A stretch of DNA of 64,000 bases from Mustelus asterias (taxonomy: Eukaryota), in assembly GCF_964213995.1 (NCBI RefSeq), contig NW_027590136.1, positions 248,001 through 312,000 on the forward strand, in the 5' to 3' direction. The notes beneath the pieces are model-generated. The model was given only the letters and a program-made list of their open reading frames with translations. It was not told the DNA's origin and ran no database searches. The translations under genes were made by a program, and so were the position numbers. Shown in pieces: positions 18,312 to 49,360 of this stretch. Every line of letters begins with the position of its first letter. Position 1 is the stretch's first letter.

Positions 18312-18625
18312 GGTGAGTGTCACTGGGAGGTGAGTGATAAAATACAAGTGGAAACATCATGACAGAGACACATGTGACTGACTCGGCCTGACTGAGAGCT
18401 GTTATACTCGAGGCGAGAATAATGAGGACATGGCGAACTCTTGAGATTTCTGATATCTGAGGTGTATCTGTTAGAGGAACTGAAAATAATCAGTTCCTCC
18501 TCATGGTCATCTCCAGTTCTCAAGTTACACAGACACACAGGAAAGAGATCTGACAGCTCATCAAACCCAATATTTTAATCTTCTGTTTGAGACACATTAT
18601 AATCGAAAAGATCAAATATTAAAAC
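18312..18625 (-). pseudogene. Decayed antigen-receptor V gene segment with a degenerate 23-RSS
   Basis: Splice acceptor CTCCTCAG at 18626; across frames NVSQTE, SLSC, NW, ELIIFSSSNRY and ITALSQAESVT(gt)CLC; then CACTTGT-23 nt-ACACTCACC. Confidence 0.55.
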
Positions 18626-20720: not shown

Positions 20721-21631
20721 GGTTCACACCCAGGGATCACTGAGAATGATCAAAATAAGGAGATCACCCAGAAAACTACCAACAGGAAACTTCAGCTGAA
20801 CACATCACTCATTCTTAAATGGTCAGTCAGGGCTCTGGTGCAGCTCAGCTTCTCTCTGTTCTCTTTATAATGGTTAAAGGCTGATAGGAGTGAGGTTTAT
20901 TTAAAAGGATAGTGTATGGGAAGCACACATCAACAAAACTGAGAATTCTTGGACACACACTGCAGCTCCTTCTCTATCTGGGAATCAAATTGTTGTCTAA
21001 TTGTCCCAGCAGTTAACAGGCTCCTTTGAACTTCTCCAGCTCCTCCTTTAATGCAGACTTCAACCAATTTATTTTAAGCCAGTTTCTGTTCAATAAACCA
21101 GGACTGACACACATACATTAAAATGTTTTAGACTTTTTTTCATTTTTAGCTTGGAAACCTAAACCTGCCGTTTCACTCTCAGTCAGGAATAGATCCCAGT
21201 TTTACACCAATCTTTGACAGCACGTTTCCAGCATTCACCGTTGTTCTTCCTGACTCTAAACACAGTTGTAAAGGAGCTTCTGTTCCGTGTCTAGGAGCTC
21301 TGAACCATGGAAAAGAACGACTGGGACACATTTCTTACACACCTCAGGATTCACCCACACGGGGACTTTGCTGTCAGTGAAAAGTGACGAAAAAGACCAA
21401 AGTGCTGTGTGACCCTCTCAGCGTGACCCTGAAGGACTGGGTCAAGAATGAAGTTCTGTTCCTCCTGTATGACCCTCCCTCAGATTGCCCTTTCTGAGCT
21501 CCAGCCTGGTGACGTTAAACACTCAAATGGAAAAGACAAAAATCTACAACAATGATTCAATCAAATGTCTATTTCACATTTATTCAGAATATCAAACCTC
21601 AACAGAAGAAAAAAGTCAGAGTGAACATGAT

Positions 21632-22780: not shown

Positions 22781-23699
22781 GGTGCTGGTGCCCTTGTGTT
22801 TCTCCAGGTTGGATGATCAGTTCAAGCCTCATCCACACACACAACATACACGTAGTTTCACCCTGCTGTGAACTGTGATTTTTTTTCAGGCTGTGTAACT
22901 GGTTAAAGCTCTTTCCACAGTCGGTTCACTGGAACACTCTCACTCGGGTGTGTGTTTGTCCTGCTGCTTTTCTGGTCACACTGATGTTTAATTTCTTTGC
23001 CCACAGGCAGAACAGACAAATATTGCTCCTTCCATATTCAAAGACCGATCATATTCAGCTCCGAAGGAACTGAATGACTTTGTCAGATGTGATGTTCGGT
23101 TTGAGTTTTCTGTCTGCCATTCCTTCACTTTGAATATCCTGTAAAAACAGTTTAGAAAAGTCATCACTGTCAGAACAGGATAGAAACTCTGAACAATTCT
23201 AGTCTTTCTGGAACATTTTTTCCTTTCTTGTTCCCCCAAATCTGTAAATCTCCGTCCCACACACTCTCCCTCCTCCCTGCGCTGAAATCCAAACCCATCT
23301 CACCATTTCTTTCCTCCACTCCCAGTTTTCTCCCTCCCTCTCCTCTGTCTGGGTTCAGTTCTCCAGCTCCTGTCTGCAGACTGACAATAAAACCAATGGG
23401 TCTTATTGGGGGCGTTGGGGCCTCCAGCGGGTGTTTGTGAATCCTCCCCGCCCACCTCCCAGGGTTTCCTTCCTTCCCAGAGATCAGAGTCCTCATTGAT
23501 TTGAGGCCAAAGTGTAACCTCTTATTTATTGTCCCCCTCCCCCATCCTCTGATGTGAACCATCCTCCAGTGGCTGAGCCAGGATGGGGCCGTTAACCTGG
23601 GCCTGTTCCCGGGAGGGAGGGAGGGAGAAGCCCCGCAGCTGCAAACCAGGGAGCTGACAATGATTCTGAAGGGTTTGCGGATCCACAAAGTGTTTCCAA

Positions 23700-24190
23700 A
23701 TCCTCCCAGCCACCGCCTAACGCTGACTCCGCTTCTCCGGGACAAACAAGCGCAAGGACAGCAATGACACTGCGCATGCTCCACATCACAATGCCCGGGC
23801 ACTGATTGACGCCAGCTGCGGACCAATAGGAAGAGGGGGCCGGACTGGAGGACCGAGCGGGAGCGGCTGGTCCTCCAACCAATCGGAGTGAATGAGAGGC
23901 GGGGCCTGTAGCATGCGCAGTGCGGGTAATGACGACGGATGGACGGTTTTAACTCGGTAGCGAGATCAATACGAGGTAGAGGGCGGCGTGCGAGGAATGA
24001 TAAATGTGGCGGGTGGGTGGAGAGGCTTTGTAAACATGTTGTTCAACCCCAAACCCCGGAAATGAACTTCCCGGTTCCCCCCCTTTGTACCAAATGGAGC
24101 GGCAGCTTGTAGTGTTAGACCCGGGCTGACTGCCGCCATTGAGGCTGCATGTGGGAGGCCGGCAGGGATTGTGATCGGAGAGTGAAGCCC
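23700..24190 (-). promoter_or_regulatory. ZNF promoter module, copy 2
   Basis: Inverted paralog of 870-1450. Confidence 0.65.
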
Positions 24191-24356
24191 TGACGTCACA
24201 ATGGAATGGGTGAGAGTGTGAGGTCACAATGGAATGGGTGGGAGTGTGAGGTCACAATGGAATGGGTGAGAGTGTGATGTCACAATGGAATGGGTGAGAG
24301 TGTGACGTCACAATGGAATGGGTGAGAGTGTGATGTCACAATGGAATGGGTGAGGG
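24191..24356. repeat. 28-bp CRE minisatellite, copy 2 (6 units, 2 perfect CREs)
   Basis: TGACGTCA, TGAGGTCA and TGATGTCA units. Confidence 0.92.
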
Positions 24357-24404
24357 TTCCAGATGAGCTGAGACTGGGCTGGAGTCGGGCGATGGCACTG
24401 ACAT

Positions 24405-24715
24405 GTGGCCCGGTGGCACAGTGGTTAGCGCAGCTGCCTAACAGCGCCAGGGACCCGGGTTCAATTCCAGCCTCGGGTCGCTGTCTGTGCAGAGTTTCTA
24501 CATTCTCCCCGTGTCTGGGTGGGTTTCCTCCGGGTGTTCCGGTTTCCTTCCACAGTCCAAAGATGTGCAGGTTAGACAGATTGGCCATGATAAATTAACC
24601 CTTGGCATCAGGGGGATTAACAGGTAAATATGTGGATAGGGCCTGGATGGGATTGTTGTCGGTGCAGGCTCGATGGGCTGAATGGCCTCCTCCTACAATG
24701 TATTTTATGATTCAT
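24405..24715 (+). mobile_element. HE1-like SINE
   Basis: SINE head, body and tail. Confidence 0.82.
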
Positions 24716-24837
24716 TACTGTTAATTAATTAATTACTTTGAATGAAGGTGGTCTTGATGATGATGTGGACGTGGTTGGAAGCTCATATTGGGATGAACTA
24801 TTTCACCCTGGTTGTGAACAGCCTGTTTCAGCCTCAG

Positions 24838-25207
24838 ACAGTAAGTAATCTCACAACACCAGGTTAAAATCCAACAGGTTAATTTGCTGGCATAAGCCAC
24901 AGGATTTTGGAGCGCTGCTCTTCATCAGGTGAGTGGGAGTTCTATTCACAAACAGGGCACAGAGACACAAACTCAATTTACAAAATAATGGTTGGAATGT
25001 GAGTCTTTACAGGTAATCAAGTCTTAAAGGTACAGACAATGTGAGTGGAGAGAGGGTGAAGCACAGGTTAAAGAGATGTGTATTGTCTCCAGCCAGGACA
25101 GTTAGTGAGATTTTGCAAGCCCAGGCAATTTGTGGGGGTTACAGACAGTGTGAGTTACAGATAGTGTGACATGAACCCAAGATCCCGGTTGAGGCCGTCC
25201 TCATGTG
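24838..25207 (-). mobile_element. Penelope-like 3' fragment with a degenerate hammerhead
   Basis: Reverse complement of 17415-17775. Confidence 0.82.
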
Positions 25208-26107
25208 TGATTGACAGATCCATGCTCACTGCTTCTTGCCCTGGATGCAGAGAGCTGAAAATTTCCATGCAGGCTGCCAGACAAATAAATGTCTACATTA
25301 CTGGAGTAAAAATGTGTGGAATATACAGACCGAATTCACTTCATTCCCTTCAGTTGCTGCAAGTCCCCAATTTCCCCCAGAATGAGAAAAGAAATGGAAA
25401 GGGGGAAACATTGATTTCCTCCCAGATGTTGTCCAGAGGAGGAAGTTTCAATCTGAAGCTCATTGGACAACTTCCGCATTGTGACATCACAATGGAGCCT
25501 GCCTGAATCAGCGAATAGGAATCTCTCTTCCTACATCAAGAGCTGATGTTTCTTGTCTGGATGACCCTTTGTCAAAGCTCTGAAACATCTGTTCTTTTCT
25601 CTCCATACAGATGCTGCCAGACCTGCTGAGAATGGGGAGACAGTGTGTGGGATGGAGATTTACAGCTTTTGGGGAATGAGAGAGGCAAGAATGTTCCATA
25701 GAAATTGTCTGTTCTGAATTTCTATGCTGTACTGACACTGATGACTTTTGTAAACTCGTTTTACAGGATATTGAAAGAGGAATCACAGGCCGAAATCTCA
25801 AACGTCATGTCTAGACGTGACAGAGTCATATTCCTTGGGACCTCAATATCATCGGACTTTGAATCCAGAAGGAGAAATGATTGTCCGGTCTGTCGATTTG
25901 AAATGTCAGTGTGAGTGAAAAAGCATCAACACACTGCCACACTTGAGTGAGTGTGTTCCAATGCACTGACTAAAAAGCTTTAACCAGTTACACAGTTTGA
26001 ATAAATATCACACCATTCACAGCGGGGAGAGACTGTAATCTTGTTCTGAGTGTGGGTGAAGTTTCAACTAATTGTCTAGTCAAGAGAGAGGTAAGGACAC
26101 CTGCACC

Positions 26108-27286
26108 ATGGAGAAACCATGGAAATGTGGGGACTGTGGGAAGGGATACAGAGCCCCATCTAAGCTGGAAGCTCATCGACGCAGCCACACTGGGGAGAGA
26201 CCATTCACCTGCTCTCAATGTGGGAAGGGATTCACTCGATTATCCCTCCTGCAGAGACACCAGCAAGTTCACACTGGAGAGAGGCCATTTTCCTGCTCTC
26301 AATGTGAGAAGGGATTCAGTCAGTTATCCGACCTGCAGAGACACCAGCGAGTTCACACTGGGGAGAGGCCGTTCACCTGCTCTCAGTGTGGGAAGGGATT
26401 CACTCAATTATCCACCCTGCGGACACATGAACGAGTTCACACTGGGGAGAGGCCATTCACCTGCTCTCAGTGTGGGAAGGGATTCATTCTGTTATCCAGC
26501 CTGCGGATACACCAGCGAGTTCACACTGGGGAGAAACCATTCACCTGCTCTCAGTGTGGGAAGGGATTCATTCAGTTATCCAGCTTGCAGAAACACCAGC
26601 ACGTTCACACAGGAGAGAGGCTGTTCACCTGCTCTCAGTGTGGGAAGGGATTCACTCGGTCATCCCTCCTGCAGAGACACCAGCGAGTTCACACTGGGGA
26701 GAGGCCATTCAACTGTTCTCAGTGTGGGAAGGGATTCACTCAGTCATCCATCCTGCGGACACACCAGCGAGTTCACACTGGGGAGAGACCGTTCACCTGC
26801 TCTCAGTGTGGGAAGGGATTCACTCAGTCAGCCGACCTGCAGAGACACCAGCTACGTCACACAGGGGAGAGGCCGTTCACCTGCTCTCAGTGTGGGAAGG
26901 GATTCATTCTGTTATCCAGCCTGCGAATACACCAGCGAGTTCACACTGGGGAGAAACCATTCATCTGTTCTCAGTGTGGGAAGGGATTCACTAACTCATC
27001 TGATCTGCGGACACACCAGCGAGTTCACACAGGGGAGAGGCCGTTCACCTGCTCTCAGTGTGGGAAGGGATTCACTCAGTCATCCCACCTGCAGAGACAC
27101 CAGCGAGTTCACACTGGGGAGAGACCATTCGACTGTTCTCAGTGTGGGAAGGGATTCACTCAGTCATCCAACTTGCAGACACACCAGCGAGTTCACACTG
27201 GGGAGAGGCCGTTCACCTGCTCTCAATGTGGGAAGGGATTCAGAGTTTCATCCCACCTGCTGAGACACCAACAAGTTCACGAGTGA
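26108..27286 (+). CDS. C2H2 zinc-finger protein, 14 fingers
   Basis: MEKPWKC start; highly homogeneous CSQCGKGF repeats. Confidence 0.9.
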
Positions 27287-27509
27287 TGACAGGGGTTGGA
27301 TTCTGCTGTTATTGTTTCTGCTCTCAATTATATCCAGGACTGCATTTTGTTCATTCTCACAGTTGGTCAATGGGGAGGGTCGGAGGGTTTCTTTCTGCTG
27401 GACTGGCCGGTCTCATGACTTTGCCTCCAGTGGGCTGATGCTCTTTGAGTCTTGTTGCGAATACCTGGTTTTTAGATTTCACAAGGATCACAGAGTGACA
27501 GGATGTTAG

Positions 27510-27785
27510 GAAGTTATAGAGGTTTACAACATGGAAACAGGCCCTTCGGCCCAACTTGTCCATTCCGCTCAGTTTTTACCACTAAGCTAGTCCCAATTGC
27601 CCGTATTTTGCCCATATCCCTCTATACCCATCTTACCCATGTAACTGTCTAAATGCTTTTTAAAAGACAGAATTGCACCCACCTCTACCACTGCCTCTGG
27701 CAACTCGTTCCAGACACTCACCACCATCTGAGTGAAAAATTGCCCCTCTGGACCCTTTTGTATCTCTCCCCTCTCACCTTAAACC
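27510..27785 (-). mobile_element. CR1 LINE 3' end
   Basis: Same family as the 28383-31090 tail. Confidence 0.8.
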
Positions 27786-36592: not shown

Positions 36593-36659
36593 TTATAAGA
36601 TGTACAGGTTAGGTTGATTGGCCATGCTCAATTGCCACTTAGTGTCCCAGGATGTGTGG

Positions 36660-36880
36660 GTTGGGGGGGCAATGCTCGGGGGGGGGGCAATGCTCGGGGG
36701 GGGGGCAATGCCCGGGGGGGGCAAAGCCCGGGGGGGGCAAAGCCCGGGGGGGGGGGGGCAAAGCCCGGGGGGGGGCAAAGCCCGGGGGGGGGGGCAAAGC
36801 CCGGGGGGGGGGGGGGGCAAAGCCCAGGGGGGGGGGCAAAGCCCAGGGGGGGGGGGGCAAAGCCCAGGGGGGGGGGAGGG
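36660..36880 (+). repeat. G-rich minisatellite (GCAAAGCCC-Gn)
   Basis: About 11 units with long G-runs. Confidence 0.9.
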
Positions 36881-36881
36881 A

Positions 36882-37975
36882 CAGAGAGATAGTAAAAGTT
36901 TTTACAAATATATAAAAAGGAAAAGAGTAGCTAAAGTAAATGTTGGACCCTTAGTAGATGAGAAGGGGGATTTAATAATGGGAAACGAGGAAATGGCTGA
37001 GGCCTTAAACAAGTTTTTTGTATCAGTCTTCACGGTAGAGGACACAAATAGCTTACCGAAAATTGACGGTCATGGGACTGTAGGGGATGAGGTCCTTAAA
37101 ATGATTACTATTACTAAAGAGGTAGTGCTTGGGAGGCTAATGGGACTAAAGGTAGACAAGTCCCCGGGCCCGGATGGAATGCATCCCAGGGGACTGAAAG
37201 AAATGGCAGAAGTAATAGAGGATGCGTTGGTTGTAATTTATCAAAATACGCTGGACTCTGGGGAAGTGCCGGCTGATTGGAAAACAGCTAATGTGACGCC
37301 ACTGTTTAAAAAAGGAGGTAGACAAAAGGCGGGTAACTACAGGCCGGTTAGCTTAACGTCCGTAGTTGGGAAATTGCTGGAATTCATCATTAAGGAAGAA
37401 ATAGCAGGACACCTGGAAAAAAATGGTTTGATCAAGCAGACGCAGCATGGATTCATGAAGGGAAAGTCGTGTTTGACAAATTTACTGGATTTTTATGTTG
37501 ATGTAACGAGTGCGGTTGACAGAGGGGAACCAGTGGATGTGGTGTTTTTGGATTTCCAGAAGGCGTTCGATAAGGTGCCTCACAAAAGGTTGCTGCAGAA
37601 AATCAGGGTGCACGGAGTTAGGGGTAAAGTGTTAGCGTGGATTGGGGATTGGCTATCTAACAGGAAGCAGAGAGTTGGAATAAATGGGTGCTTTTCTGGT
37701 TGGCAGTTGGTGACTAGTGGCGTGCCACAGGGATTGGTGCTGGGGCCTCAAGTATTTACCATATGCATAGACGATCTGGAGGAGGGGACCGAGTGTTGGG
37801 TAACAAAGTTTGCGGATGACACAAAGATGAGTGGGAAAGTGAATTGCGTGGAGGATGCGGTAAGTCTGCAGAGAGATTTGGATAGGCTAAGTGAGTGGGC
37901 GAGGATCTGGCAGATGGAGTATAGCGTTGGTAAGTGTGAGCTTATCCACTTTGGAAGGAATAATAGTAAAATGGA
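36882..37975 (+). mobile_element. CR1 LINE RT fragment with an open frame
   Basis: KSPGPDG, NYRPVSLTS, GVPQG and FADD. Confidence 0.93.
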
Positions 37976-38174
37976 AGCTGCAATGCTGCCCCCTGTTGTT
38001 CACTTCTCCCAGTCTCAGCATTGCAGAGTGTTTAAACAAGAATGGCACATTCAGCACCATGGAATGAGAACATTCGGACTAACTCTTCGTTATACAATTG
38101 TTCTGTTTGTATTAACAGTTCACAATCCAGGTCACAGATCTGATTCAGTGAGAGGAGGTGAGAGTGCCTTTGCA

Positions 38175-38213
38175 GGTTTTTGTACGGGCTCACTGCGCCT
38201 CTGTAGCAGTGTG
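38175..38213 (-). other. 23-bp-spacer recombination signal sequence
   Basis: CACACTG + 23 nt + ACAAAAACC immediately after the V coding end. Confidence 0.95.
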
Positions 38214-38651
38214 GGGCTCAGCGCACAGTGATACACGGCAGAGTCAGAGACATGGACCCCAGTGATATTTAAAGGAACTGTTTTCTTGTCCTTGTCCAAA
38301 TCAGCAGAAAACCGGTCAGGGAAATCTGGAGACTTTTCTCCGCCCCCCGTGCTATATTTCTGCAGTAAATATCTCGGAGCTTCCCCGGGATACTGGATGT
38401 ACCAGAAGAGATTTGGAAAAGCATCCGTTGTTGTGTAATTACAATTCACTATTACGTTCAATCCTTCCTGAACCGTTAATTCAGCCGGGTCCTGGGAAAC
38501 TGAATCTTGGCCATTGATTCCTGCAACAAAATGTAGAATGTGTGAGAAATCTGTGAACAAATATAACCCATGAAACACACACTGAGGATCTGAGCTCAGA
38601 CTCACCGGGCAGCGTGGTCATTGTTATCAGTAAAGCACACAGGAGATACAT
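38214..38651 (-). CDS. TRAV: T-cell receptor alpha/delta-type V gene segment (leader exon 38651-38606, intron 38605-38521, V exon 38520-38214)
   Basis: MYLLCALLITMTTLP-G|GTGAGT…TTGCAG|GINGQDSVSQDPAELTVQEGLNVIVNCNY…LFWYIQYPGEAP…DSAVYHCALSP; no stops; followed by an RSS. Confidence 0.92.
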
Positions 38652-38815
38652 GGTTCCTGATTGGACAGTAAGCAGCGACAATGTTTACAATAAGTTGCTG
38701 CCTCTAGTCTTATATCACAGAGTGAACTCAGATCAGAGGCAGCTTCAAGTATTCAGAAACAGGGAGGCGTTTCTCAGTGCTGCGATTGGCTCATCTCCCT
38801 GAGCTGACGTCAGCT
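38652..38815 (-). promoter_or_regulatory. V-segment promoter
   Basis: CRE TGACGTCA at 38805-38812, CCAAT at ~38785, TATA-like TATAAG at ~38710. Confidence 0.55.
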
Positions 38816-38819
38816 GCGA

Positions 38820-39140
38820 ATCATAAAATCCCTGCAGTGCAGAAGGAGGCCATTCGCCCCATCGAGTCTATACCGGTCACAATACCACCCAGGCTCCACT
38901 CCCGCAACTCCATGTATTTACCCTGCGTATCCCCTGACGCTCGGGTCAATTTAGCATGGCCAATCAACCTAACCTGCACATCTTTGGACTGTGGGAGGAA
39001 ACAGGAGAACCCGAAGGGGACCCACGTAGACACTGGGAGAACATGCAAACTCAGACAGAAAGTGATCCGAAGCCGGAATTGAACCCGGGTCCCTGACACT
39101 GTGAGACAGCAGCGCTGACCATTGTGGCATCATGCCGCCC
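38820..39140 (-). mobile_element. HE1-like SINE
   Basis: SINE consensus features. Confidence 0.82.
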
Positions 39141-39366
39141 CGTAACCAGTGAACCAATCACTGTTAGTTAATGATTTAATATAGCTGGCACTTTCCAATC
39201 ACATTCCTTCCCTGGCCGTAAACTTATTTCTAAAGTCTTTGCTCTCTCTCTGCTCTCTCCCACATCATCACTTATTCTGTCTCATTAACTGGTTAACTCG
39301 CTTTCCTCAGAACTCAGTCCATCAATCTTTCTTAAGGCAGATCCTTTTTTCTAATTTAATCATTTA

Positions 39367-39670
39367 TGGGTGACACGGTGGCGCAGTGGTTCGCATTGTT
39401 GCCTCACAGCCCCAGGGACACGGGTTCGATTCCAGCCTCGGGTCACTGTCTCTGTGGAGTTTGCACTTTCTCACCGTGTCTGCGTGGGTTTCCTCAGGTG
39501 CTCCAGTTTCCCTCCACATTCCTAAACTGTGCAGGTTTGCTGGATTGGCCACGCAAAATTACCCTAAGTGTCAGGGGATAGCAGGGTAAATATGTGGGTT
39601 ACGGGGATAGGGCCTGGGTGGGATTGTTGTCGGGACAGGCTCCATCCTGCATTGTCGGGATTCAATGATT
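39367..39670 (+). mobile_element. HE1-like SINE
   Basis: A and B boxes and tail. Confidence 0.82.
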
Positions 39671-39794
39671 CAGCAGCCTAACGTACAGGGATTAATGAGT
39701 AGCATCCAGGACTCAACATAATTAATAGTTAGTGCTGTAAGTATACCGGGGATAAGTAGTCACTCAACTCTGCACCAGAAAATATTTCACGGAC

Positions 39795-40250
39795 TCATAA
39801 CATAGAAACTAGAAGCAGGAGCCTTCTCCGCCATTCATCGTAATCATAGCTGATCATGGAATTCAATATCCTGATCCTCCTTCCCCCTCGACCCCTTTAG
39901 CCCCAAGAGCTATATCAAATTTCTTCTTGAAATCAGACAACGTTTTGGCCTCAACTACATTCGGTGGTATTGAATTCCATACATTCAACACTCTCTGGAT
40001 GAAGGAATTTCCCTTCACCTCAGTTTTTCCCTTATCTTCAAAAGATGACCCATGGTTCTGGATTCCACCATTGGGAACAGTCTTCTGGATCTACCCTGTC
40101 GAACCCTGTTAGAATTTTATAAGTTTCTATGAGACCCCCTCTCACTATTCGAAACCGCAGTGAATATAATCCTAACGGATTTAATCTCTCCTCATATGAC
40201 AGAGCTGCCATCCCAGGAATCAGCATAGTAAATCTTCACTGTACCCCTCT
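39795..40250 (-). mobile_element. CR1 LINE 3' fragment
   Basis: SYEERLNPLGLYSL…LIETYKIL. Confidence 0.82.
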
Positions 40251-40640
40251 ATTCCCCAAATAGAAAAGCTCTGATTTCAATCAGTTATTATTTCTGCTCC
40301 ACGGACTTGAAAATGGAACAATTCTGAGGCTGCATTTGATAATAGATCACTTTTAAAATGTGTCGCCGGGCAGATAGGCACCGAATCCAGAATTTTTCTA
40401 AGTACAGATTAAGGAAGTTATTCACCCGGGGTAATCTGCAGATTTTGTGCGGATGGGATCGGAGAATGGTTGGATTTGATCCGGGAATAATAGGATGGCA
40501 AATGTGACATTTCACAACACTGACAATGGCTGAGCTCAGTGGGGGAATATTATTCAGCTGGGGCTGTATTGTGGCCTTCATTTCCTGCGCATTTTCGTTG
40601 AGATCCGACTCTTTTTCTCTGACCCTGAAACGTCTGCGTC

Positions 40641-40679
40641 ACTTTTTGTATGAGGCCCGCGGGAGCCTCATTCACTGTG
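40641..40679 (-). other. Orphan 23-RSS with an 8-nt V coding-end remnant (40680-40687)
   Basis: CTGAGACC|CACAGTG + 23 nt + ACAAAAAGT. Confidence 0.8.
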
Positions 40680-41325
40680 GGTCTCAGTGGGAATCAAATT
40701 GTTGTCTAATTGTCCCAGCAGATAACAGGTTCCTTTGAACTCTCCAGCTGCTACTTTAATGCAGACTTTAACCAATTTATTTTGAGCTGGTTTCTGTTCA
40801 ATAAACTGGCACTGACACACAAACACATTAAAATATTTTAGACTTTTCTGCATTTTCAGTCTGGAAATTTAATCCTGCCATTTCACTCTCAGTCAGGAAC
40901 AGATCCCAGTTTTGCACCAATCTCTGATTTAGCAGCATGCTTCCAGCATTCACTGTTGTTCTTCCTGACTCTAAACACAGTTGTAAAGGAACTTCTGTTC
41001 CTGGTCTAGGAGCGCTGAAACATAGAAGGGAGTGACTGAGATTCTTGCACATCTCAGGATTAAACCACACGGGTACTTTGCTGTCGTGAAGAGAGACGAG
41101 GAAGAGCAAAGTGCTGTTTGTCCCTCTGTGACCCTGAAGGACTGCGTCCTGTTTGCCATATGATCCACCCCCGATTGTCTTTTCTGAGCTCCAGCCTGGT
41201 GATGTTAAACAGTCAGGTGGGAAAGACAAAAATCTACAACAATTTTAAAAAACAAAGCTGGTCTATTTCATATTTATTCAGAATATTAAACCTCAACGGA
41301 TGAAGACTGTCAGAGTGAACACGAT

Positions 41326-42306
41326 TCAGTCCTGGATATGATTAACAGCATCATTAAGAGTAGAATCCAAACCTTGCAGTCGTTTGTGAACACGCTGGTG
41401 TGTTAGCAGGTGGGATGACTGAATAAATCCCTTTCCACAGACATTACAGGTGAAGGGCCTCTCCCCAGTGTGAACTCGCTGGTGTTTCAGAAGATAAGAT
41501 AAATGAGAAAATCCCTTCCCACAGACAGAGCAGGTAAGTGGCCTCTCCGCACTGTGAACTTTCTGGTGTGTCAGCAGGTTGGATGACTGACTGAATCCCT
41601 TCCCACACACAGAGCAGGTGAACGGCCTCTCCCCAGTGTGAACTCGCTGGTGATTCAATAAGTTGGATGAACGAGTGAATCCCTTCCCACAGTCTGAGCA
41701 GGTGAAGGGCCTCTCCCCAGTGTGAATTCTCTGGTGGTTCAATAGGGCAGATGGACGGCTGAATCCCTTCCCACACACACAGCAGGTGAATGGCCTCTCC
41801 CCAGTGTGAGCATATTGGTGCGTTAGCAGATCCTTTTTATTTTTAAAGCTCTTCGCACAGTGGGAACAATTAAAAAGTTTGTTATCAGAGTGAACAAGTT
41901 GATGTGTCTGCAAGTGGGATGACTGAATGAATCCTTTCCCACACACAGAGCAGGTGAACGGTCTCTCCCCAGTGTGAATTCGTTGGTGTGTCAGCAGATC
42001 CTTTTTGCATTTAAAACTCTTCTCACAGTCAGAACATGTAAACATTCTCTCATCAGTGTGAACAAGTTGGTGTGTCACAATGTGGGATGAGCGAGTGAAT
42101 CCCTTCCCACACACAGGGCAGGTGAACGGCCTCTCCCCAGTGTGAACCCGTTGGTGAGTCAGAAGGTTGTATGAATGGGTGAATCCCTTCCCACAGACGG
42201 AGCAGGTGAACGGTCTCTCCCCAGTGTGACTGCGCCGATGAACTTCCAGTTGTGATGGGAAACCGAATCCTTTCCCGCACTCCACACATTTCCACGGTTT
42301 CTCCAT
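41326..42306 (-). CDS. C2H2 zinc-finger protein, 11 fingers; paralog of 21632-22780
   Basis: 326-aa ORF, 56 aa shorter than the paralog. Confidence 0.9.
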
Positions 42307-43219
42307 GGTGCCCTTGTGTTTCTCCAGGTTGGATGATCAGTTCAAGCCACATCCACACACACAACATACACGTAGTTTCACCCTGCTGTGAACTGTGATG
42401 TTTTTTCAGGCTGTGTAACTGGTTAAAGCTCTTTCCACATTCAGTTCACTGGAACACTCTCACTCGGGTGTGTGTTTGTCTCGATGCTTTTCCGGTCATA
42501 CTGATGTTTAATTTATTTGCCCACAGGCAGAACAGACAAATATTTCTCTTTCTATATTCAAAGACCGATGATATTCAGCTCCGAAGGAACTGAATGACTT
42601 TGTCAGATGTGATGTCCGGTTTGAGTTTTCTGTCTGCCAATCTTTCACTTCCAATATCCTGTAAAAACAGTTTAGAAAAGTCATCACTGTCAGAACACGA
42701 TACAAACTCTGAACAGACAATTCTAGTTTCTCTGGAACATTTTTTCCTTTCTTGTTCCCCCAAATCAGTAAATCCCCGTCCCACACACTCTCCCTCCTCC
42801 CTGGGCTGAAATCCAAACCCATCTCACCATTTCTTTCCTCCACTCCCAGTTTTCTCCCTCCCTCTCCTCTGTCTGGATTCAGTTCTCCAGCTCCTGTCTG
42901 CAGACTGACAATAAAACCAATGGGTCTTACTGGGGGTGTTGGGGCCTCCAGCGGGTGTTTGTGAATCCTCCCCGCCCACCTCCCAGGGTTTCCTTCCTTC
43001 CCAGAGATCAGAGTCCTCATTGATTTGAGGCCAAAGTGTAACCTCTTATTTATTGTCCCCCTCCCCCATCCTCTGATGTGAACCATCCTCCAGTGGCTGA
43101 GCCAGGATGGGGCCGTTAACCTGGGCCTGTTCCCGGGAGGGAGGGAGGGAGGGAGGGAGAAGCCCCGCAGCTGCAAACCAGGGAGCTGACAATGATTCTG
43201 AAGGGTTTGCGGATCCACA

Positions 43220-43879
43220 AAGTGTTTCCAAATCCTCCCAGCCACCGCCTAACGCTGACTCCGCTTCTCCGGGACAAACAAGCGCCAAGGACAGCAATGA
43301 CACTGCGCATGCTCCACATCACAATGCCGGGGGACTGATTGACGGCAGCTCCGGACCAATAGGAAGAGGGGGCGGGGCTGGGGGACCGAACGGGAGCGGC
43401 TGGTCCTCCAACCAATCGGAGTGAATGAGGGGCGGGACTGGAGGACCGAACGGGAGCGGCTGGTCCTCCAACCAATCGGAATGAATGAGGGGCGGGACCT
43501 GAAGCATGCGCAGTGCGGGTGAACCAGATAAACCTGTTGGACTTTAACCTGGTGTTGTTTGACTTGTTGCTGTGTTTACCCCAGTCCAACGCCGGCATCT
43601 CCACATCAGTGCGGGTAATGGCGACGGACGGCCGGTTTTAGTTTGGAAGCGAGATCAATACGAGGTAGAGGGCGGCGTGCGGGGAATGATAAATGTGGCG
43701 GGTGGGTCGAGAGGCTTTGTAAACATGTTGTTCAAACCCAAACCCCGGAAATGAACTTCCCGGTTCCCCCCCTTTGTACCAAATGGAGCGGCAGCTTGTA
43801 GTGTTAGACCCGGGCTGACTGCCGCCATTGAGGCTGCATGTGGGAGGCCGGCAGGGATTGTGATCGGAGAGTGAAGCCC
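43220..43879 (-). promoter_or_regulatory. ZNF promoter module, copy 3
   Basis: Inverted paralog of 870-1450; tandem duplication of the CCAAT/GC-box unit at 43370-43500. Confidence 0.65.
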
Positions 43880-44073
43880 CGACGTCACAATGGAATGGGT
43901 GAGAGTGTGACGTCACAATGGAATGGGTGAGGGTGTGACGTCACAATGGAATGGGTGAGGGTGTGACGTCACCATGGAATGGGTGAGGGTGTGACATCAC
44001 AATGGAATGGGTGAGGGTGTGACGTCACAATGGAATGGGTGAGGGTGTGAGGTCACAATGGAATGGGTGAGGG
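43880..44073. repeat. 28-bp CRE minisatellite, copy 3 (7 units, 4 perfect CREs)
   Basis: TGACGTCA at 43908, 43936, 43964 and 44020. Confidence 0.92.
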
Positions 44074-44283
44074 TTCCAGATGAGCTGAGACTGGGCTGGA
44101 GTCGGGCGATGGCACTGACATGTGGCCCGGTGGCACAGTGGTTAGTGCAGCTGCCTAACAGCGCCAGGGACCGGGTTCAATTCCAGCCTCGGGTCACTGT
44201 CTGTGCAGAGTTTCTACATTCTCCCCGTGTCTGTGTGGGTTTCTTCCGGATGTTCCGGTTTTCCTTCCACAGTCCAAAGATGT

Positions 44284-44665
44284 GCCGGCGTTGGACTGGG
44301 GTAAGCACAGTAAGTAATCTCACAACACCAGGTTAAAATCCAACAGGTTTATTTGGTAGCACAAGCCACAAGCTTTCAGAGCACTGCCCCTTCATCAGGT
44401 GAGTGGGAGTTCTGTTCACAAACAGGGCATATAAAGACACAAACTCAATTTACAAGATAATGGTTGGAATACGAGTCTTTAAACGTAATCAAGTCTTAAA
44501 GGTACAGACAATGTGAGTGGAGAGAGGGTTAAGCACAGGTTAAAGAGATGTGTATTGTATCCAGCCAGGACAGTTAGTGAGATTTTGCAAGCCCAGGCAA
44601 GTCGTGGGGGTTACAGATAGTGTGACATGAACCCAAGATCCCGGTTGAGGCCGTCCTCATGTGTG
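44284..44665 (-). mobile_element. Penelope-like 3' fragment; hammerhead motif at 44366-44402
   Basis: CAC-CTGATGA-A-GGGGC-AGT-GCTCT-GAAA-GC-TT-GTG on the minus strand. Confidence 0.82.
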
Positions 44666-44899
44666 ATTGACAGATCCATGCTCACTGCTTCTTGCCCTGG
44701 ATGCAGAGAGCTGAAAATTTCCATGCAGGATGCCAGACAGATAAATGTCTACATTACTGGAGTAAAAATGTGTGGAATATACAGACCGAATTCACTTCAT
44801 TTCCTTCAGTTGCTGCAAGTCCCCAACTTCCCCCAGAATGAGAAAAGAAATGGAAAGGGGGAAACATTGATTTCCTCCCAGATGTTGAACAGAGGAGGG

Positions 44900-45370
44900 A
44901 GTTTCACTCTGAAGCTCATTGGACAACTTCCGCATTGTGACGTCACAATAGTGTCCTGCCTGAATCAGCCAATAGGAATCACTCTGCTTCGCGGTGACGT
45001 CTCTGGGTTCCAGTTCTCAGGCCCGGGCGCGCGGACCCAGGAGCCCCGCCCCCACCCATTGTTCCCCTCCCCCTACACCTCCTTGAACCAAGGTTTCCAG
45101 GCAACCGGCTGACGGCTCCAGCAAGAGCGAGAAGCCGCTCAGTGAGCTCTCCCTCCCCCCGGCCCAGGACTACACATGTGCGAGGGAGAGGGGAAGCTGC
45201 GCATGTGCGGGGGAGAACCCACCCTCTGATCTTCATGCTGAGGTGTTGACCAATGGGAAGAGTTGGAGGACCGGAAGGACTCTGGTCTTCCAGCCAATCA
45301 GAGTGTGGGCTTTGTGTGAATGAAGATTGATCTTCAGACAGACTCAAACTTCCTCCTGTCTCAAACATCT
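44900..45370 (+). promoter_or_regulatory. CpG promoter and probable non-coding first exon of the ZNF at 47394
   Basis: CRE, CCAAT boxes, GC box, TGCGCATG, and donor CATCT|GTGAGT at 45370. Confidence 0.55.
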
Positions 45371-45519
45371 GTGAGTAAAACACTTTCTCTTCAACCCCCT
45401 TTCCATTTCTTTTCTCATTCTGGGGGAAATTGGGGACTTGCAGCAACTGAAGAGAAAGGAAGTGAATCCAGTGAGGGTGCAGACTCTGGAAAGGTTGGTC
45501 CAGGTTTCTCGCTCTCTCG

Positions 45520-46720
45520 AACCAGAAAATGATCCATTTCTGCCCACTGTTTGCTGTTAGCCAATCTTCTATCCACGCCAATATGTTATCCCCACAGCAT
45601 GAACTTTTATTTGCTGCAATAACCTTTGATGTGGCACCTCATCAAATGTCTTCTGGAAATCTGAGTACAGCACATCCACCGGTTTCCCTTTATCCAATGC
45701 CCGATGGGGAATTTTAGAAAATTGAACAACACATCAACGATCTCACTCTGTTAAGACCCGAGAATGAAGCCCAGCAGGACCCGAGGACTCATCAGCCCAC
45801 AGCTCCAACAGTTTGCTGAGGACCACTTCCCTGGGAATTGTGCTTTTTCAGAGTTCATCCCACACTTCTGTTTTCTGATTTCCAGCTGTTTCTGAGTTTT
45901 AACTGTATCCTCTATTGTGAACACCGAGGCAAAATACTTGTTCAATTCATCTCCCAGCTCCTTATTTTTCATTATCAATTCCTGGACTCACTTTCTATTA
46001 GACAGTTAAGAAATGAGGTGGAGCAAGTGACTGAAGTGTCAGTCAGGGAGCACTATTGGGAGCACCAATAGTTTCAAAATAGTTCAGGAAAAAGATAGGA
46101 CAGGTCCACAGGTCAAGGCCCTAAACTGGAGCAGGGCCACTTTTGTGGGCATTAGGCAGGATCGAGCAGATGTCGATTAGGTGAGTTTGTTTGAAGGGAA
46201 AGGAATGACTGGCAAATGGGAGGTTTTAAAAGTGTGATATCAAGAATCCAGGGGCAGTATATTCCTGTTAAGATGAAGGGAAAGAATGGTAAATTTAAGG
46301 ATCTCTGGCAGACAAGGGACATTGAGGCTCTGGTCAGGTAAAAGAAGGAAGCATACATTGGGTTTAGGCAATCGGGGACAAGTGAATCACTCTGACTATA
46401 AAAAGTGTAAGAAAATACTGAGGAGGGAAATCAGGAGGACAAAAAGAGGGTCTGATATGGATCTGGCAGGTAAGATTAAAGAAAATTCCAAGAGGTTCTA
46501 TAGCTATATTAAGAGTAAGACGGTGGCTAGAGAGAGAATAGATCCCCTTAAAAATCAGTATGGCCATCTGTGTGTGGAGCTACAGGAGATGGGTGAGATT
46601 TTTAATGAATACTTCTCCTCTGTGTTTACTGCGGAGAGCACCATGAGGGCTAAAGAAATAAGGGAAACAAGTGGTGATGTCTTGGGCACACGCTCGTTAC
46701 TTGGGAGGAGGTATCTGCAG
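45520..46720. mobile_element. Two CR1 fragments (minus ~45520-45990; plus ~45995-46720)
   Basis: ELNKYFASVFT; IKENSKRFYSYIKSK. Confidence 0.8.
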
Positions 46721-47393
46721 CCTTATAAAAGCAAATTACTGCGGATGCTGGCGTCTGAAGCCAAGGGAGAAAATGCTGGAAAATCTCAGCAGGTCTAGCA
46801 GCATCTGTAAGGAGAGAAAAGAGCTGATGTTTCTTGACGAAATGACCCTTTGTCAAAGCTCTGAAACATCAGTTCTTTTCTCTCCATCCAGGTGCTGCCA
46901 GACCTGCTGAGAATGGGGAGAGAGTGTGTGGGATGGAGATTTACAGCTTTTGGGGAATGAGAGAGGAAAGAATGTTCCATAGAAATTGTTCTGAATTTCT
47001 ATCCTGTACTGACACTGATGACTTTTGGAAACTCATTTTCAGGATATTGAAAGAGGAATCACAGGCCGAAATCTCAAACGTCACGTCTAGGCGTGACAGA
47101 ATCGTGTTCCTTGGGACCTCAATATCATCGGACTTTGAATCCAGAAGGAGAAATGATTGTCCAGTCTGTCGATTTGAAAAGATTTGAAATGTCAGTGTGA
47201 GTGAAAAAGCATCAACACACTGCCACACTTGAGTGAGAGTGTTCCAATGCACTGACTAAAGAGCTTTAACCAGTTACACAGTCTGAATAAATATCACACC
47301 ATTCACAGCGGGTAGAGACTGTAATCTTGTCCTGTGTGTGGACGAAGTTTCAACTGATTGTCCACCCAAGAGTGAGGCAAGGAAACCTGCACC

Positions 47394-48068
47394 ATGGAGA
47401 AACCATGGAAATGTGGGGACTGTGGGAAGGGATACAGAGCCCCATGTCTGCTGGAAGCTCATCGGCGCAGCCACACTGGGGAGAGGCTGTTCATCTGCCC
47501 TCAGTGTGAGAAGGGATTTAATCAGTTCTCCAGCTTACGGACACACCAACGAGTTCACACTGGGGAGAGACCATTCACCTGCTCTCAATGTGGGAAGGGA
47601 TTCATTCAGTCATCCCACCTGCGGACACACCAGCGAGTTCACACTGGGGAGAGGCCATTCACCTGCTCTCAGTGTGGGAAGGGATTCACTCAGTTATCCA
47701 GCCTGCAGACACACCAGCGAGTTCACACTGGGGAGAGGCCATTCACCTGCTCTCAGTGTGGGAAGGGATTCACTCAGTTATCCAGCCTGCAGACACACCA
47801 GCGAGTTCACACTGGGGAGAGGCCGTTCACCTGCTCTCAGTGTGGGAAGGGATTCACTCGGTTACCCGACCTGCGGACACACCAGCGAGTTCACACAGGG
47901 GAGAAACCATTCACCTGCTCTCAGTGTGGGAAGGGCTTCACTCGGTCATCCACCCTGCGGACACATCAGCCAGTTCACACTGGGGAGAGGCCATTCACCT
48001 GCTCTCAGTGTGGGAAGGGTTTCAGCGTTTCATCCCGGCTGCTGAGACACCAGCGAGTTCACGAGTGA
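47394..48068 (+). CDS. C2H2 zinc-finger protein, 8 fingers; paralog of 26108-27286
   Basis: 224-aa ORF. Confidence 0.88.
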
Positions 48069-48289
48069 TGACAGGGGTTGGATTCTGCTGTTATTGTTTC
48101 TGCTCTCAGTTGCATCCAGGATTGCATTTTGTTCATTCTCACAGTTGGTCAATGGGAAGGGTCAGAGGGTTTCTTTGTGCTGGACTGGCCGGTCACAGCC
48201 TCCAGTGGGCTGATGCTCTTTGAACCTTTTTGTGAATACCTGGTTTCAAATGTCACAAGGATCACAGAGTGACAGGGTGTTAGGAAGTT

Positions 48290-49360
48290 TAGAGATATTG
48301 AGTCAGAAGAAAACAGAGGTTGGCAGTGCAAAGGTACATTTCTGAATGGAGGGCTGTGACAAGTGACGTTCCTCAGGGATCAGTGCTGGGACTTTTGCTG
48401 TTTGTAATATATATAAATGATTTGGAGGAAAATGTAACTGGTTTGATTGGTAAGTTTGTGGACGACACAAAGGTTGGTGGAATTGCGGATAGCGATGGGG
48501 ACTGGCAGAGGATACAGCAGGATATAGATCAGTTGGAGACTTGGGCAGAGAGATGGCAGATGAAGTTTAATCCGGACAAATGTGAGGTAATGCATTTTGG
48601 AAGGTCTAATACAGATGGGAAATATACAGTCAATGGAGAACCCTTCAGAGTATTCATAGGCAGAGGGATCTGGGTGTACAGGTGCACAGGTTATTGAAAG
48701 TGGCAATGAGGTGGAGAAGATAATCAAGAAGGCATACGGCATGCTTGCCTTCTTCGGCCGGGGCATTGAGTTTAAAAATTGGTAAGTCATGTTGCAGCTT
48801 TATAGAACCTTATTTAGACCGCACTTGGAATCTAGTGTTCATTTCTGGTCACCACACTACCAGAAGGAAGTGGGGGCTTTGGAGAGGGTATGGAAAATAT
48901 TTACCAGGATGTTGCCTGGTAGCATTAGCTATGAGGAGAGGTTGGAGAAACTTGGTTTGTTCTCACTGGAACAACGGAGGTTGAGGGGGGCGACCTGATA
49001 GAAGTCTACAAGATTATGAGGGTCATGGACAGAGTGGATAATCAGACGCTTTTTCCCAGGGTGGAAGAGTCAATTACGAGAGGCATAGGTTTAAGGTGCG
49101 AGGGGCAAGGTTTAAAGGAGATGTACAAGGCAGGTTTTTTACACAGAGCGTGGTGGGTGCCTGGAACCCGTTGCCGGGGAAGGTAGTGGAAGCAGATACG
49201 GCAGTGACTTTTAAGATGTGTCTTGACAAATATATGAATAGCATAGGAACAGAGGGATATGGTCCCCGGAAAGGTAGGGGGTTTTAGTTCAGACGGGCAG
49301 CATGGTTGCTCCAGGCTTGGAGGGCCAAAGGGCTTGTTCCTGTGCTGTAATTTTCTTTGT
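48290..49360 (+). mobile_element. CR1 LINE RT to 3' end
   Basis: [12 protein letters not shown] and RPHLE motifs. Confidence 0.9.

What the first reader, a model, noticed from the sequence alone, without database searches (positions are those of the whole stretch)
40641..40700. Orphan 23-RSS whose V gene was amputated by the ZNF duplication breakpoint 8 nt from the heptamer
Seen on the minus strand: CTGAGACC, perfect CACAGTG, 23 nt, ACAAAAAGT, in the same orientation as the TRAV 2.4 kb away. CTG AGA CC (L-R-P) fits a CALRP-type V end. At 40688 the sequence switches to the ZNF 3'-flank block. Its paralogs at ~20980 and ~9690 continue with shared non-RSS sequence, so this junction is the derived state. 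Inference: a ZNF block was joined into a V array right beside an RSS. Sharks are known to have germline-joined Ig genes, so a germline RAG break or nick with slight end processing is a candidate mechanism for mixing TCR V and ZNF arrays. This is speculative because the break is not flush with the heptamer.
Basis: partly seen in the sequence, partly recalled or inferred. Interest (0 to 1): 0.85.

Follow-up and report, generated by a model that had tools for sequence, protein, structure and literature searches.

The report
Leftover recombination signal of lost V-gene
A T-cell-receptor V gene lost everything except its last 8-10 letters where V-gene DNA abuts a duplicated zinc-finger gene block, leaving an intact-looking recombination signal with no gene; it looks like an ordinary rearrangement relic, not a cut made by the recombinase.

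Summary
On the minus strand, 40679-40641 reads a perfect heptamer, a 23-nt spacer and a 7/9 nonamer. At two mismatches or fewer the window has 2 such sites against 0.11 expected; the other is the RSS of the intact TRAV-like V 2.47 kb downstream. The 8 nt before the heptamer match that V's coding end at 7 of 8 positions. Homology to the zinc-finger (ZNF) 3' flank stops at 40688. The closest copy (89.5% identical) and an outgroup copy (71%) share 55 more nt, so this junction is derived. A zero-difference 98-nt read contig crosses it.

I read it as a V relic at a junction between duplicated blocks. RAG involvement is not supported:
- the coding stub is still attached to the heptamer;
- the ZNF paralogs have no CAC within 72 nt of the break;
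- there are no P nucleotides and no second signal end.

One coincidence remains. The break lies 8-10 nt from the heptamer, and 10 nt is where the neighbouring V's embedded CACTGTG would be cut.

Only 2.7 kb here is V-type DNA in a ZNF/transposon landscape, so the V fragment may be the guest. The scan noted similar orphan RSSs on other pieces of this genome; I could not check them.

The parts
40641..40649 (-). Nonamer ACAAAAAGT of the orphan 23-RSS (7 of 9 to the consensus; the mismatches are the last two positions)
40650..40672 (-). 23-nt spacer. It is nearly palindromic, with arms ATGAGGC (40671-40665) and GCCTCAT (40656-40650).
   Evidence: As single-stranded DNA it folds at -7.4 kcal/mol, z -2.28; 4 of 200 shuffles fold as well.
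40673..40679 (-). Perfect heptamer CACAGTG
40680..40687 (-). V coding-end stub CTGAGACC (reads L-R-P with the first heptamer base). The two bases before it (CA, 40689-40688) are shared with the ZNF paralogs, so the break lies 8-10 nt from the heptamer.
   Evidence: 7 of 8 identical to the neighbour V end CTGAGCCC; junction alignment
40688..41325 (-). 3' flank of the ZNF gene. It is homologous to 20979-21631 and, in part, to 9692-9946. It is about 55 nt shorter than in those copies. AATAAA lies about 85 nt before the junction.
41326..42306 (-). C2H2 zinc-finger ORF (326 aa), one member of the duplicated head-to-head ZNF pair (block 40688-48294)
   Evidence: Pfam zf-C2H2 E 6e-68
40248..40640 (-). 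Sequence downstream of the orphan RSS, unique within the window; presumed former V 3' flank / inter-V spacer
   Evidence: No self-BLAST hit at E<=1e-4. Contigs of a related organism (X1) cover 40287-40629 at about 90-97% identity.
38214..38520 (-). V exon of the intact TRAV-like segment. The leader exon is 38651-38606. It contains CACTGTG at 38230-38224 (His-Cys-Ala codons), followed by 10 nt of coding end.
   Evidence: Pfam V-set E 1e-17; the best single-domain PDB matches are TCR alpha V domains
38175..38213 (-). 23-RSS of the intact V (CACACTG, 23 nt, ACAAAAACC)
36618..38013 (+). LINE reverse-transcriptase fragment that stops at RVT_1 profile position 194 of 205, with no 3' part. It forms the lower edge of the V island, 40-160 nt past the V's RSS.
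   Evidence: the 3' truncation is my inference
20924..20978 (-). Ancestral continuation of the ZNF flank in copy B, shared with copy C at 9637-9691 and missing in copy A

Best explanation
This is the relic of a TCR alpha/delta-type V segment. Its last 8-10 coding bases, its complete 23-RSS and its former 3' flank (40687 down to about 40248) survive. The V body is gone.

The relic sits at a junction between two duplicated blocks:
- a ~7.6 kb block holding a pair of ZNF genes (40688-48294), whose 3' flank is cut about 55 nt short of its ancestral end;
- a ~2.7 kb island of V-array DNA (37976-40687) that carries the next, intact V.

The junction was most likely made by an ordinary germline rearrangement, either a segmental-duplication or a deletion breakpoint. 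It was repaired with 0-2 nt of microhomology (the CA shared by both parents) and without RAG.

Shown: the motif, the stub, the derived junction, and read support at k-mer level.

Inferred: that the parent was a V of the CAL-x-P end type; that the break was not made by RAG; that the V island rather than the ZNF block is the displaced piece; and that the RSS would still be cut in thymocytes, giving non-productive joins to J segments.
For: - RSS quality and rarity: 2 sites at <=2 mismatches against 0.11 expected; the other is the real V RSS, on the same strand, 2.47 kb away.
- The stub is 7 of 8 identical to the neighbour V's end. Read through, it gives L-R-P-T. That is the same pattern as the window's V (CALSPT) and as P0001 (CALIPT), the only database relative, at 74% identity.
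- Homology to ZNF flank copies ends exactly at 40688.
- Flank identities are A-B 89.5%, A-C 71.0%, B-C 71.4%, and B and C share 55 nt beyond the break, so A is derived.
- The zero-difference contig 40620-40717 has single-copy-like depth.
- The V island is bounded at its other side by a reverse-transcriptase fragment lacking its 3' part. So both edges look like rearrangement breakpoints.
- The far end of the ZNF duplication abuts transposon sequence, not an RSS.
- There is no CAC near the break in the ancestral-type copies.
Against: - The parent V family was not found, so homology of 40248-40640 to other V 3' flanks is untested. One database V was found. There were no V tails in the representative library. 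The metagenome scan gave 0 hits.
- The orphan spacer is unlike the neighbour V's spacer: 8 of 23 positions by my count.
- The break falls within 0-2 nt of the position where a V-embedded heptamer would be cut. A random breakpoint gives this only about 1 time in 10, even given a break within 30 nt of the RSS (my estimate).
- First-stage notes report at least three more orphan 23-RSSs at ZNF breakpoints on other pieces. If these are independent events, they argue for a site-specific process.
- Junction bridging was shown in one run only, and that run may be the assembly's own sample.
Confidence: 0.72

Rival explanations
1. One-ended RAG scar. In a germ-line cell, RAG cut the lost V at its embedded cryptic heptamer, the (C/T)ACTGTG formed by the Tyr/His-Cys-Ala codons. 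That heptamer points the opposite way to the V's own RSS, as in VH replacement. The released coding end (CA + CTGAGACC + RSS + downstream DNA) was then joined by end-joining to an unrelated break in the ZNF flank.
For: - The neighbour V has a perfect CACTGTG followed by exactly 10 nt of coding end before its RSS.
- The orphan keeps 8 certain plus 2 ambiguous (CA) nt, so an un-nibbled cut at that site fits.
- Embedded heptamers in that orientation, without a nonamer, that leave a short downstream footprint are documented for VH genes (PMC3526766 passages; PMC3918983 and PMC3585286 abstract starts).
- Germ-line RAG-like rearrangement is documented for shark light-chain genes (PMC2193156 abstract).
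- First-stage notes name similar junctions elsewhere in this genome, one of them 'exactly at the cryptic-heptamer position' (unchecked).
Against: - The V body is absent, so whether the parent had such a heptamer, or a GCA alanine codon, is unknown. The neighbour has GCG.
- The CA is equally explained as ZNF-flank sequence, since all three paralogs read CCCA.
- There is no partner heptamer on the ZNF side: no CAC within 72 nt in either ancestral-type copy.
- There are no P nucleotides.
- The papers read concern IgH, not TCR V genes: 'TCR' and 'shark' each occur 0 times in PMC3526766.
Confidence: 0.08
2. Canonical RAG product at this RSS: a germ-line coding, signal or hybrid joint, or a RAG-mediated transposition that inserted signal-ended DNA next to the ZNF block.
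For: Only the proximity of a good RSS to a rearrangement junction, and the shark precedent for germ-line RAG activity (PMC2193156 abstract).
Against: - Cleavage separates the heptamer from its coding flank, but here 8 nt of V-type coding end are still attached.
- A signal or hybrid joint, or a transposition end, would be flush with the heptamer.
- There is no inverted second RSS within the window: no plus-strand match at <=3 mismatches except a repeat-type site at 59069.
- I saw no target-site duplication at the junction.
Confidence: 0.02
3. Chance motif, or a different kind of segment. Either the heptamer-23-nonamer arose by chance in ZNF-cluster DNA, or it belongs to a D or J segment (read on the plus strand: nonamer, 23 nt, heptamer, then coding).
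For: - 29 perfect heptamers occur in the window on both strands, many inside repeats.
- 0.11 chance sites per window are expected at <=2 mismatches.
Against: - Same strand and 2.47 kb from the only V in 64 kb, plus a 7 of 8 V-end stub. My estimate of the joint chance is about 1e-6.
- Plus-strand reading: the 'coding' side is the ZNF flank, shared with copies that lack any RSS. I saw no F/W-G-x-G motif in my own reading of the three frames (sequence; no tool run).
- There is no 12-RSS upstream of the stub, so it is not a D. The only 12-spacer hit nearby is 40789-40816, with 3 mismatches and in the V-type orientation.
Confidence: 0.03
4. Assembly misjoin between a V locus and a ZNF paralog at a shared 30-mer.
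For: - Read contigs break exactly at 40688-40717 and at 40620-40649, which indicates branching k-mers.
- The bridging contig has only 30 letters on the ZNF side.
- In X20 the contig reaching 40689 has 12 unfitted letters.
Against: - The 98-nt contig is built of 31-mers that each cross the junction. Its depth is 46, level with both neighbours (38.5 and 41.8), and it has 0 differences.
- The branching is expected, because paralogs share that 30-mer.
- X20's contig carries the RSS and stub up to 2 nt past the junction.
Confidence: 0.04

Closest known systems
Truncated V pseudogenes ('relics' or vestigial V segments) and V orphons in antigen-receptor loci
   Same: A V segment that has lost most of its coding region but keeps flanking elements; it lies in the orientation of neighbouring V segments; the V DNA has been displaced among unrelated genes by duplication.
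   Different: Here the truncation is extreme (8-10 nt of coding left) while the RSS is still perfect or near-perfect, and the breakpoint is also the edge of a ZNF duplicated block. That such relics are catalogued is my recollection. My one literature search for this listed no paper holding 'orphan RSS'.
Isolated recombining elements: deltaREC in TRA/TRD and the kappa deleting element (IGKDEL / RS)
   Same: An RSS with no functional coding segment inside or beside an antigen-receptor locus. In mammals these are real RAG substrates whose joins delete TRD or IGKC (PMC3666889 passages).
   Different: Nothing here shows use in lymphocytes, a fixed partner, or a position from which a deletion would have a role. 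That deltaREC carries a V-type 23-spacer signal is recalled, not read.
VH-replacement cryptic RSS (embedded TACTGTG / CACTGTG) and its footprint
   Same: The neighbouring V carries a perfect CACTGTG in the opposite orientation, 10 nt from its RSS. The orphan retains 8-10 nt, the size of a replacement footprint.
   Different: VH replacement is somatic, joins an upstream V's coding end to the footprint, and was described for IgH. Here the upstream partner is non-coding ZNF flank with no RSS, and the event is germ-line.
Germline-joined Ig genes of cartilaginous fishes
   Same: Precedent that RAG-like activity has altered germ-line antigen-receptor genes (PMC2193156 abstract).
   Different: Those are V-J or V-D-J fusions in which the RSSs are lost and hairpin intermediates are inferred. 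Here the RSS is intact and nothing is fused to a J or D.

Membership tests
23-bp-spacer recombination signal sequence | Heptamer CACAGTG with CAC at the coding border | tested here: met
   7 of 7 at 40679-40673
23-bp-spacer recombination signal sequence | Spacer of 23 +/- 1 nt and an A-rich nonamer | tested here: met
   23 nt; ACAAAAAGT, 7 of 9, A-run intact
23-bp-spacer recombination signal sequence | Abuts a V, D or J coding segment | tested here: not met
   Only an 8-10 nt V-end stub; upstream is ZNF 3' flank shared with paralogs
23-bp-spacer recombination signal sequence | Cut by RAG in lymphocytes; quantitative RIC score | not testable with these tools
   No RIC model and no lymphoid read sets; the single read-laying run went to DNA contigs
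TRAV/TRDV-type V segment (as pseudogene relic) | Leader, V-set exon with conserved Cys and Y-x-C | tested here: not met
   tblastn with the neighbour V finds nothing at 40688-41300 or elsewhere; the best other hit is 13 aa at E 0.59 at 18274-18312. The in-frame translation upstream of the stub has 6 stops.
TRAV/TRDV-type V segment (as pseudogene relic) | Coding end and RSS like those of V segments of the same locus, in the same orientation | tested here: met
   Stub 7 of 8 to the neighbour V; L-x-P-T read-through as in the window V and P0001; same strand
TRAV/TRDV-type V segment (as pseudogene relic) | 3' flank homologous to flanks of other V segments of the genome | not testable with these tools
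RAG-made germ-line joint (coding, signal or hybrid joint, or transposition) | Junction at the heptamer border of the RSS involved | tested here: not met
   8 nt of coding flank remain on the heptamer
RAG-made germ-line joint (coding, signal or hybrid joint, or transposition) | A partner RSS at the other parent's break | tested here: not met
   In the strings, which start 8 nt before the break, the first CAC is at index 72 (copy B) and 92 (copy C)
RAG-made germ-line joint (coding, signal or hybrid joint, or transposition) | P nucleotides or a target-site duplication | tested here: not met
   The junction reads GATTCC-CA-CTGAGACC; no palindromic extension of either end and no repeat
Cleavage at a V-embedded cryptic heptamer (VH-replacement type) | GTG-ended heptamer immediately 5' of the retained footprint | tested here: inconclusive
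   The parent V is absent. The neighbour V has CACTGTG + 10 nt. The orphan keeps 8 nt plus an ambiguous CA.
Deleting element (deltaREC / IGKDEL type) | Isolated RSS used recurrently with a fixed partner to delete part of the locus | not testable with these tools
   Structure fits (isolated RSS); use, partner and map position relative to D/J/C are unknown

The most novel reading that the evidence does not exclude
In this genome RAG has repeatedly cut V segments in the germ line at their embedded CACTGTG heptamer. The released ends (10-nt footprint + RSS + downstream V units) were joined to breaks in an expanding zinc-finger cluster. On this reading the interleaving of TCR V islands with ZNF genes, and a set of orphan 23-RSSs at ZNF breakpoints, would be a genome-scale footprint of germ-line recombinase activity.
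Probability: 0.06. Interest if true: 0.85.

Novelty: new member of a known kind. Interest (0 to 1): 0.3.

Why it matters
As read here, this is a clean, datable example of how V-gene DNA and a zinc-finger cluster were mixed by duplication. It leaves a stranded RSS that probably still works.

Such a site could act as a decoy. In thymocytes it could join non-coding DNA to J segments and delete the V next to it. That can be tested directly in thymus DNA.

It would matter much more if the similar junctions noted on other pieces of this genome are independent and all sit at the embedded-heptamer position. That would extend germ-line RAG activity, so far argued from fused shark Ig genes, to large-scale genome rearrangement.

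Tried and rejected
- Simple insertion of the ZNF block into a V exon. The V's 5' part should then lie beyond the other end of the block. tblastn with the neighbour V found no V fragment anywhere else (best 13 aa, E 0.59, at 18274-18312). The far end (48295 / 27517) abuts transposon sequence.
- Simple tandem duplication of a unit running from the stub to the ZNF flank of copy B. The regions upstream of copies A and B are not colinear.
- Simple insertion of the V island into the ZNF flank. The missing 55 nt of flank do not reappear on the other side of the island; only copy C matches them.
- Deletion with copy B's weak V-like stretch (18274-18625; note s1-892947) as sister of the lost V. There is no homology between its downstream DNA and 40248-40687, and I saw no RSS after it.
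- D segment and J segment readings (my own reading of the frames).
- Transposon terminal inverted repeat. There is no inverted partner.

Searches that gave nothing useful:
- V exon against 5.8 billion proteins: 1 hit among 2 candidates.
- Exact look-up of 5 window ORFs: 0 of 5 in the collection.
- The 45-aa read-through of stub + RSS + flank against 1.84 billion representatives: 1 hit, a 1656-aa protein matched in 6 stretches, which I take as compositional.
- Metagenome scan: 0.
- Findings look-up by sequence: blank.
- Paper searches for ZNF genes in shark TCR loci. One search listed 14 papers, none on this by title. In one search, 'zinc' and 'ZNF' occur 0 times in PMC12227049.
- Paper search for 'orphan RSS': 15 of 135 papers listed, and none of the 15 holds the term.

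I did not compute a RIC score (no model at hand). I did not run the genome-wide enrichment test (only this window is readable). Supplementary files were not consulted, and no claim here depends on them.

Full report
**What is there.** On the minus strand the window reads ...GATTCCCA | CTGAGACC | CACAGTG | 23 nt | ACAAAAAGT (40687-40641).
- A scan for the consensus 23-spacer signal at two mismatches or fewer finds two sites in 64 kb, against 0.11 expected from 100 shuffles. One is this site. The other is the signal of an intact V segment at 38213-38175 on the same strand.
- That V has a 46-nt leader exon (38651-38606), a splice acceptor and an open V exon (38520-38214). The exon matches Pfam V-set (E 1e-17). 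Its best single-domain matches among solved structures are TCR alpha V domains.
- Its coding end is ...TAT CAC TGT GCG CTG AGC CC, followed by CACACTG, 23 nt and ACAAAAACC.
- The eight bases in front of the orphan heptamer match that coding end at 7 of 8 positions.
- Read through, the orphan gives L-R-P-T. The window's V gives C-A-L-S-P-T and the only database relative, P0001, gives C-A-L-I-P-T.
- A chance motif is therefore very unlikely.

**The junction.**
- BLAST of the region against the window shows that 40688-42229 is homologous to 20979-22535, and that 40688-40938 is homologous to 9692-9946. Both alignments begin exactly at 40688.
- This is the 3' flank of a C2H2 zinc-finger gene (ORF 41326-42306; zf-C2H2 E 6e-68).
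- The flank belongs to a larger duplication, 20979-27521 with 40688-48294. It contains two ZNF genes head to head.
- In the flank, copy A (here) and copy B (20979) are 89.5% identical. Each is about 71% identical to copy C (9692).
- B and C continue together for 55 nt past the point where A switches to the stub and RSS.
- All three copies read CCCA at the break. The last two bases (CA) could therefore come from either parent, and the break lies 8 to 10 nt from the heptamer.

**Read support** (the only read-laying run).
- In run X19, three contigs with no differences tile the region: 40117-40649, 40620-40717 and 40688-40910. Their depths are 38.5, 46 and 41.8. They overlap by 30 letters, as unitigs built from 31-letter words do.
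- The middle contig crosses the junction with 68 and 30 letters, one short of the tool's own bridging criterion.
- The contig breaks are expected on the ZNF side, because paralogs share that 30-mer.
- X19 may be the sample the assembly came from, so this rules out a k-mer-level misjoin but is not independent confirmation.
- In a second sample (X20) a contig covers 40395-40689, i.e. RSS, stub and two bases beyond, and then has 12 letters that do not fit.
- A related organism (X1) holds 40287-40629 at roughly 90-97% identity. No listed piece shows its state at the junction.
- Unexplained: the 40618-40671 bin is far deeper than the bins to its left in X20 (2062 against about 303), X22 and X1. In X19 overlapping contigs account for the sum. 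X19 also has a contig break at 40620-40649. Both hint at other copies of the nonamer-side sequence in the genome.

**Context.**
- Self-comparison shows that V-type DNA is confined to 37976-40687. From high to low coordinates this holds: the relic RSS and 440 nt of unique flank; a repeat at 39819-40247; an inverted pair of SINE-like elements (39368-39645 and 38818-39140); and the intact V.
- 40-160 nt past that V's RSS the sequence runs into a reverse-transcriptase ORF on the other strand. The ORF stops at position 194 of 205 of the RVT_1 profile and has no 3' part. I read this as a second rearrangement edge.
- Around this 2.7 kb island the window holds nine ZNF-type ORFs and no other V.
- So the statement that 'a ZNF block was joined into a V array' may be the wrong way round. 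A one-unit fragment of a V array, starting 8-10 nt before the previous V's RSS, may have been placed among ZNF blocks.
- I could not make any simple model fit. Insertion of either piece into the other, tandem duplication, and deletion with copy B as sister all failed (see Tried and rejected). The locus is a mosaic, and the direction stays open.

**Was RAG involved?**
- Canonical cleavage at this RSS is excluded: its coding flank is still attached.
- A signal or hybrid joint, or a transposition end, would be flush with the heptamer. There is also no second, inverted signal end.
- A two-signal recombination needs a heptamer on the ZNF side. In the ancestral-type copies B and C the first CAC is more than 60 nt past the break.
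- Neither end shows a palindromic extension.
- The far end of the ZNF duplication abuts transposon DNA, not an RSS.
- One coincidence remains. The neighbouring V has a perfect CACTGTG, formed by its His-Cys-Ala codons, in the opposite orientation to its RSS and followed by exactly 10 nt of coding end. A cut there, as in VH replacement (PMC3526766 passages; abstract starts of PMC3918983 and PMC3585286), would leave exactly CA + CTGAGACC + RSS if the lost V had GCA for alanine.
- A first-stage note on another piece of this genome describes a junction 'exactly at the cryptic-heptamer position'. That title prompted this check.
- Because the CA is equally ZNF sequence, because the parent V is missing, and because the ZNF side has no signal, I rate a one-ended RAG break at about 8%.
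- Germ-line RAG-like activity in sharks is documented for fused light-chain genes (PMC2193156 abstract). It is a precedent, not evidence here.

**What could not be done.**
It needs other V loci of this genome.
- The protein database held one relative of the V. The representative library returned no V tail like the orphan's read-through. A metagenome scan found nothing.
- Within the window the flank is unique.
- The orphan's spacer differs from the neighbour's (8 of 23 by my count), so the lost V belonged to another subfamily.

**Other notes of this scan** (unchecked leads).
- Three further notes describe orphan 23-RSSs at ZNF duplication breakpoints on other pieces. One again mentions an 8-nt stub.
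- 21 notes describe V segments or V islands inside ZNF clusters.
- If the orphan junctions are copies of this one, the event is single and ordinary. If they are independent, the RAG reading gains a great deal. This is the decisive comparison.

**Comparison with known things.**
- Structurally this is a truncated V pseudogene reduced to its RSS.
- Functionally the nearest known objects are isolated signals such as deltaREC and the kappa deleting element, which are real RAG substrates (PMC3666889 passages). Nothing here shows use.
- It fails the tested defining features of a RAG-made joint.

**Verdict.** The relic interpretation is well supported. The RAG mechanism is not supported, though a cryptic-heptamer cut is not excluded. 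Interest is modest unless the genome-wide comparison shows recurrence. The species is coded in the tools. Two 'shark metagenome' runs hold about 5-6% of the sampled words. I did not otherwise verify that this is a shark.

Noticed in passing
window 40650-40671 (minus): The orphan RSS spacer is almost a palindrome (ATGAGGC...GCCTCAT around CCGCGG). As single-stranded DNA, stub + RSS folds at -7.4 kcal/mol, z -2.28; 4 of 200 shuffles fold as well. The meaning is unknown; the neighbour V's spacer is not like this.
   Followed up: partly
window 38224-38230: The intact V carries a perfect consensus heptamer in reverse orientation (CACTGTG, from its His-Cys-Ala codons), 10 nt from its own RSS. This is a stronger embedded heptamer than the TACTGTG usual in VH genes.
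   Followed up: partly
window 40618-40725: The summed contig depth in bin 40618-40671 is about 7x the bins to its left in X20 (2062 against 303), and also raised in X22 and X1. In X19 overlapping contigs explain the rise. X19 has a contig break at 40620-40649. This suggests further copies of the nonamer-side sequence elsewhere in the genome. On the ZNF side, contigs with T at 40722 and C at 40730 carry the copy-B letters.
   Followed up: partly
window 18274-18625 (minus): A weak V-like stretch (13 aa...KYHCSLS, tblastn E 0.59) lies 2.7 kb downstream of copy B's flank end. A first-stage note calls it a decayed V. I saw no RSS after it and no homology to the orphan's flank.
   Followed up: partly
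window 38818-39140 and 39368-39645: Two copies of a SINE-like repeat in inverted orientation (75% identical to each other; many copies in the window) lie between the orphan RSS and the intact V.
   Followed up: no
window 20979-27521 and 40688-48294: The duplicated block carries two ZNF genes head to head. Identity ranges from 82% in the 3' flank to 93% further in. Copy A has about 1.8 kb extra at 44985-46819. The uneven identity may reflect gene conversion.
   Followed up: no
window 40771-40776 (minus): AATAAA is conserved in copies A and B (AATATA in C), about 85 nt before the junction. So the ZNF transcript probably ends before the relic (my reading).
   Followed up: no
   Followed up: no
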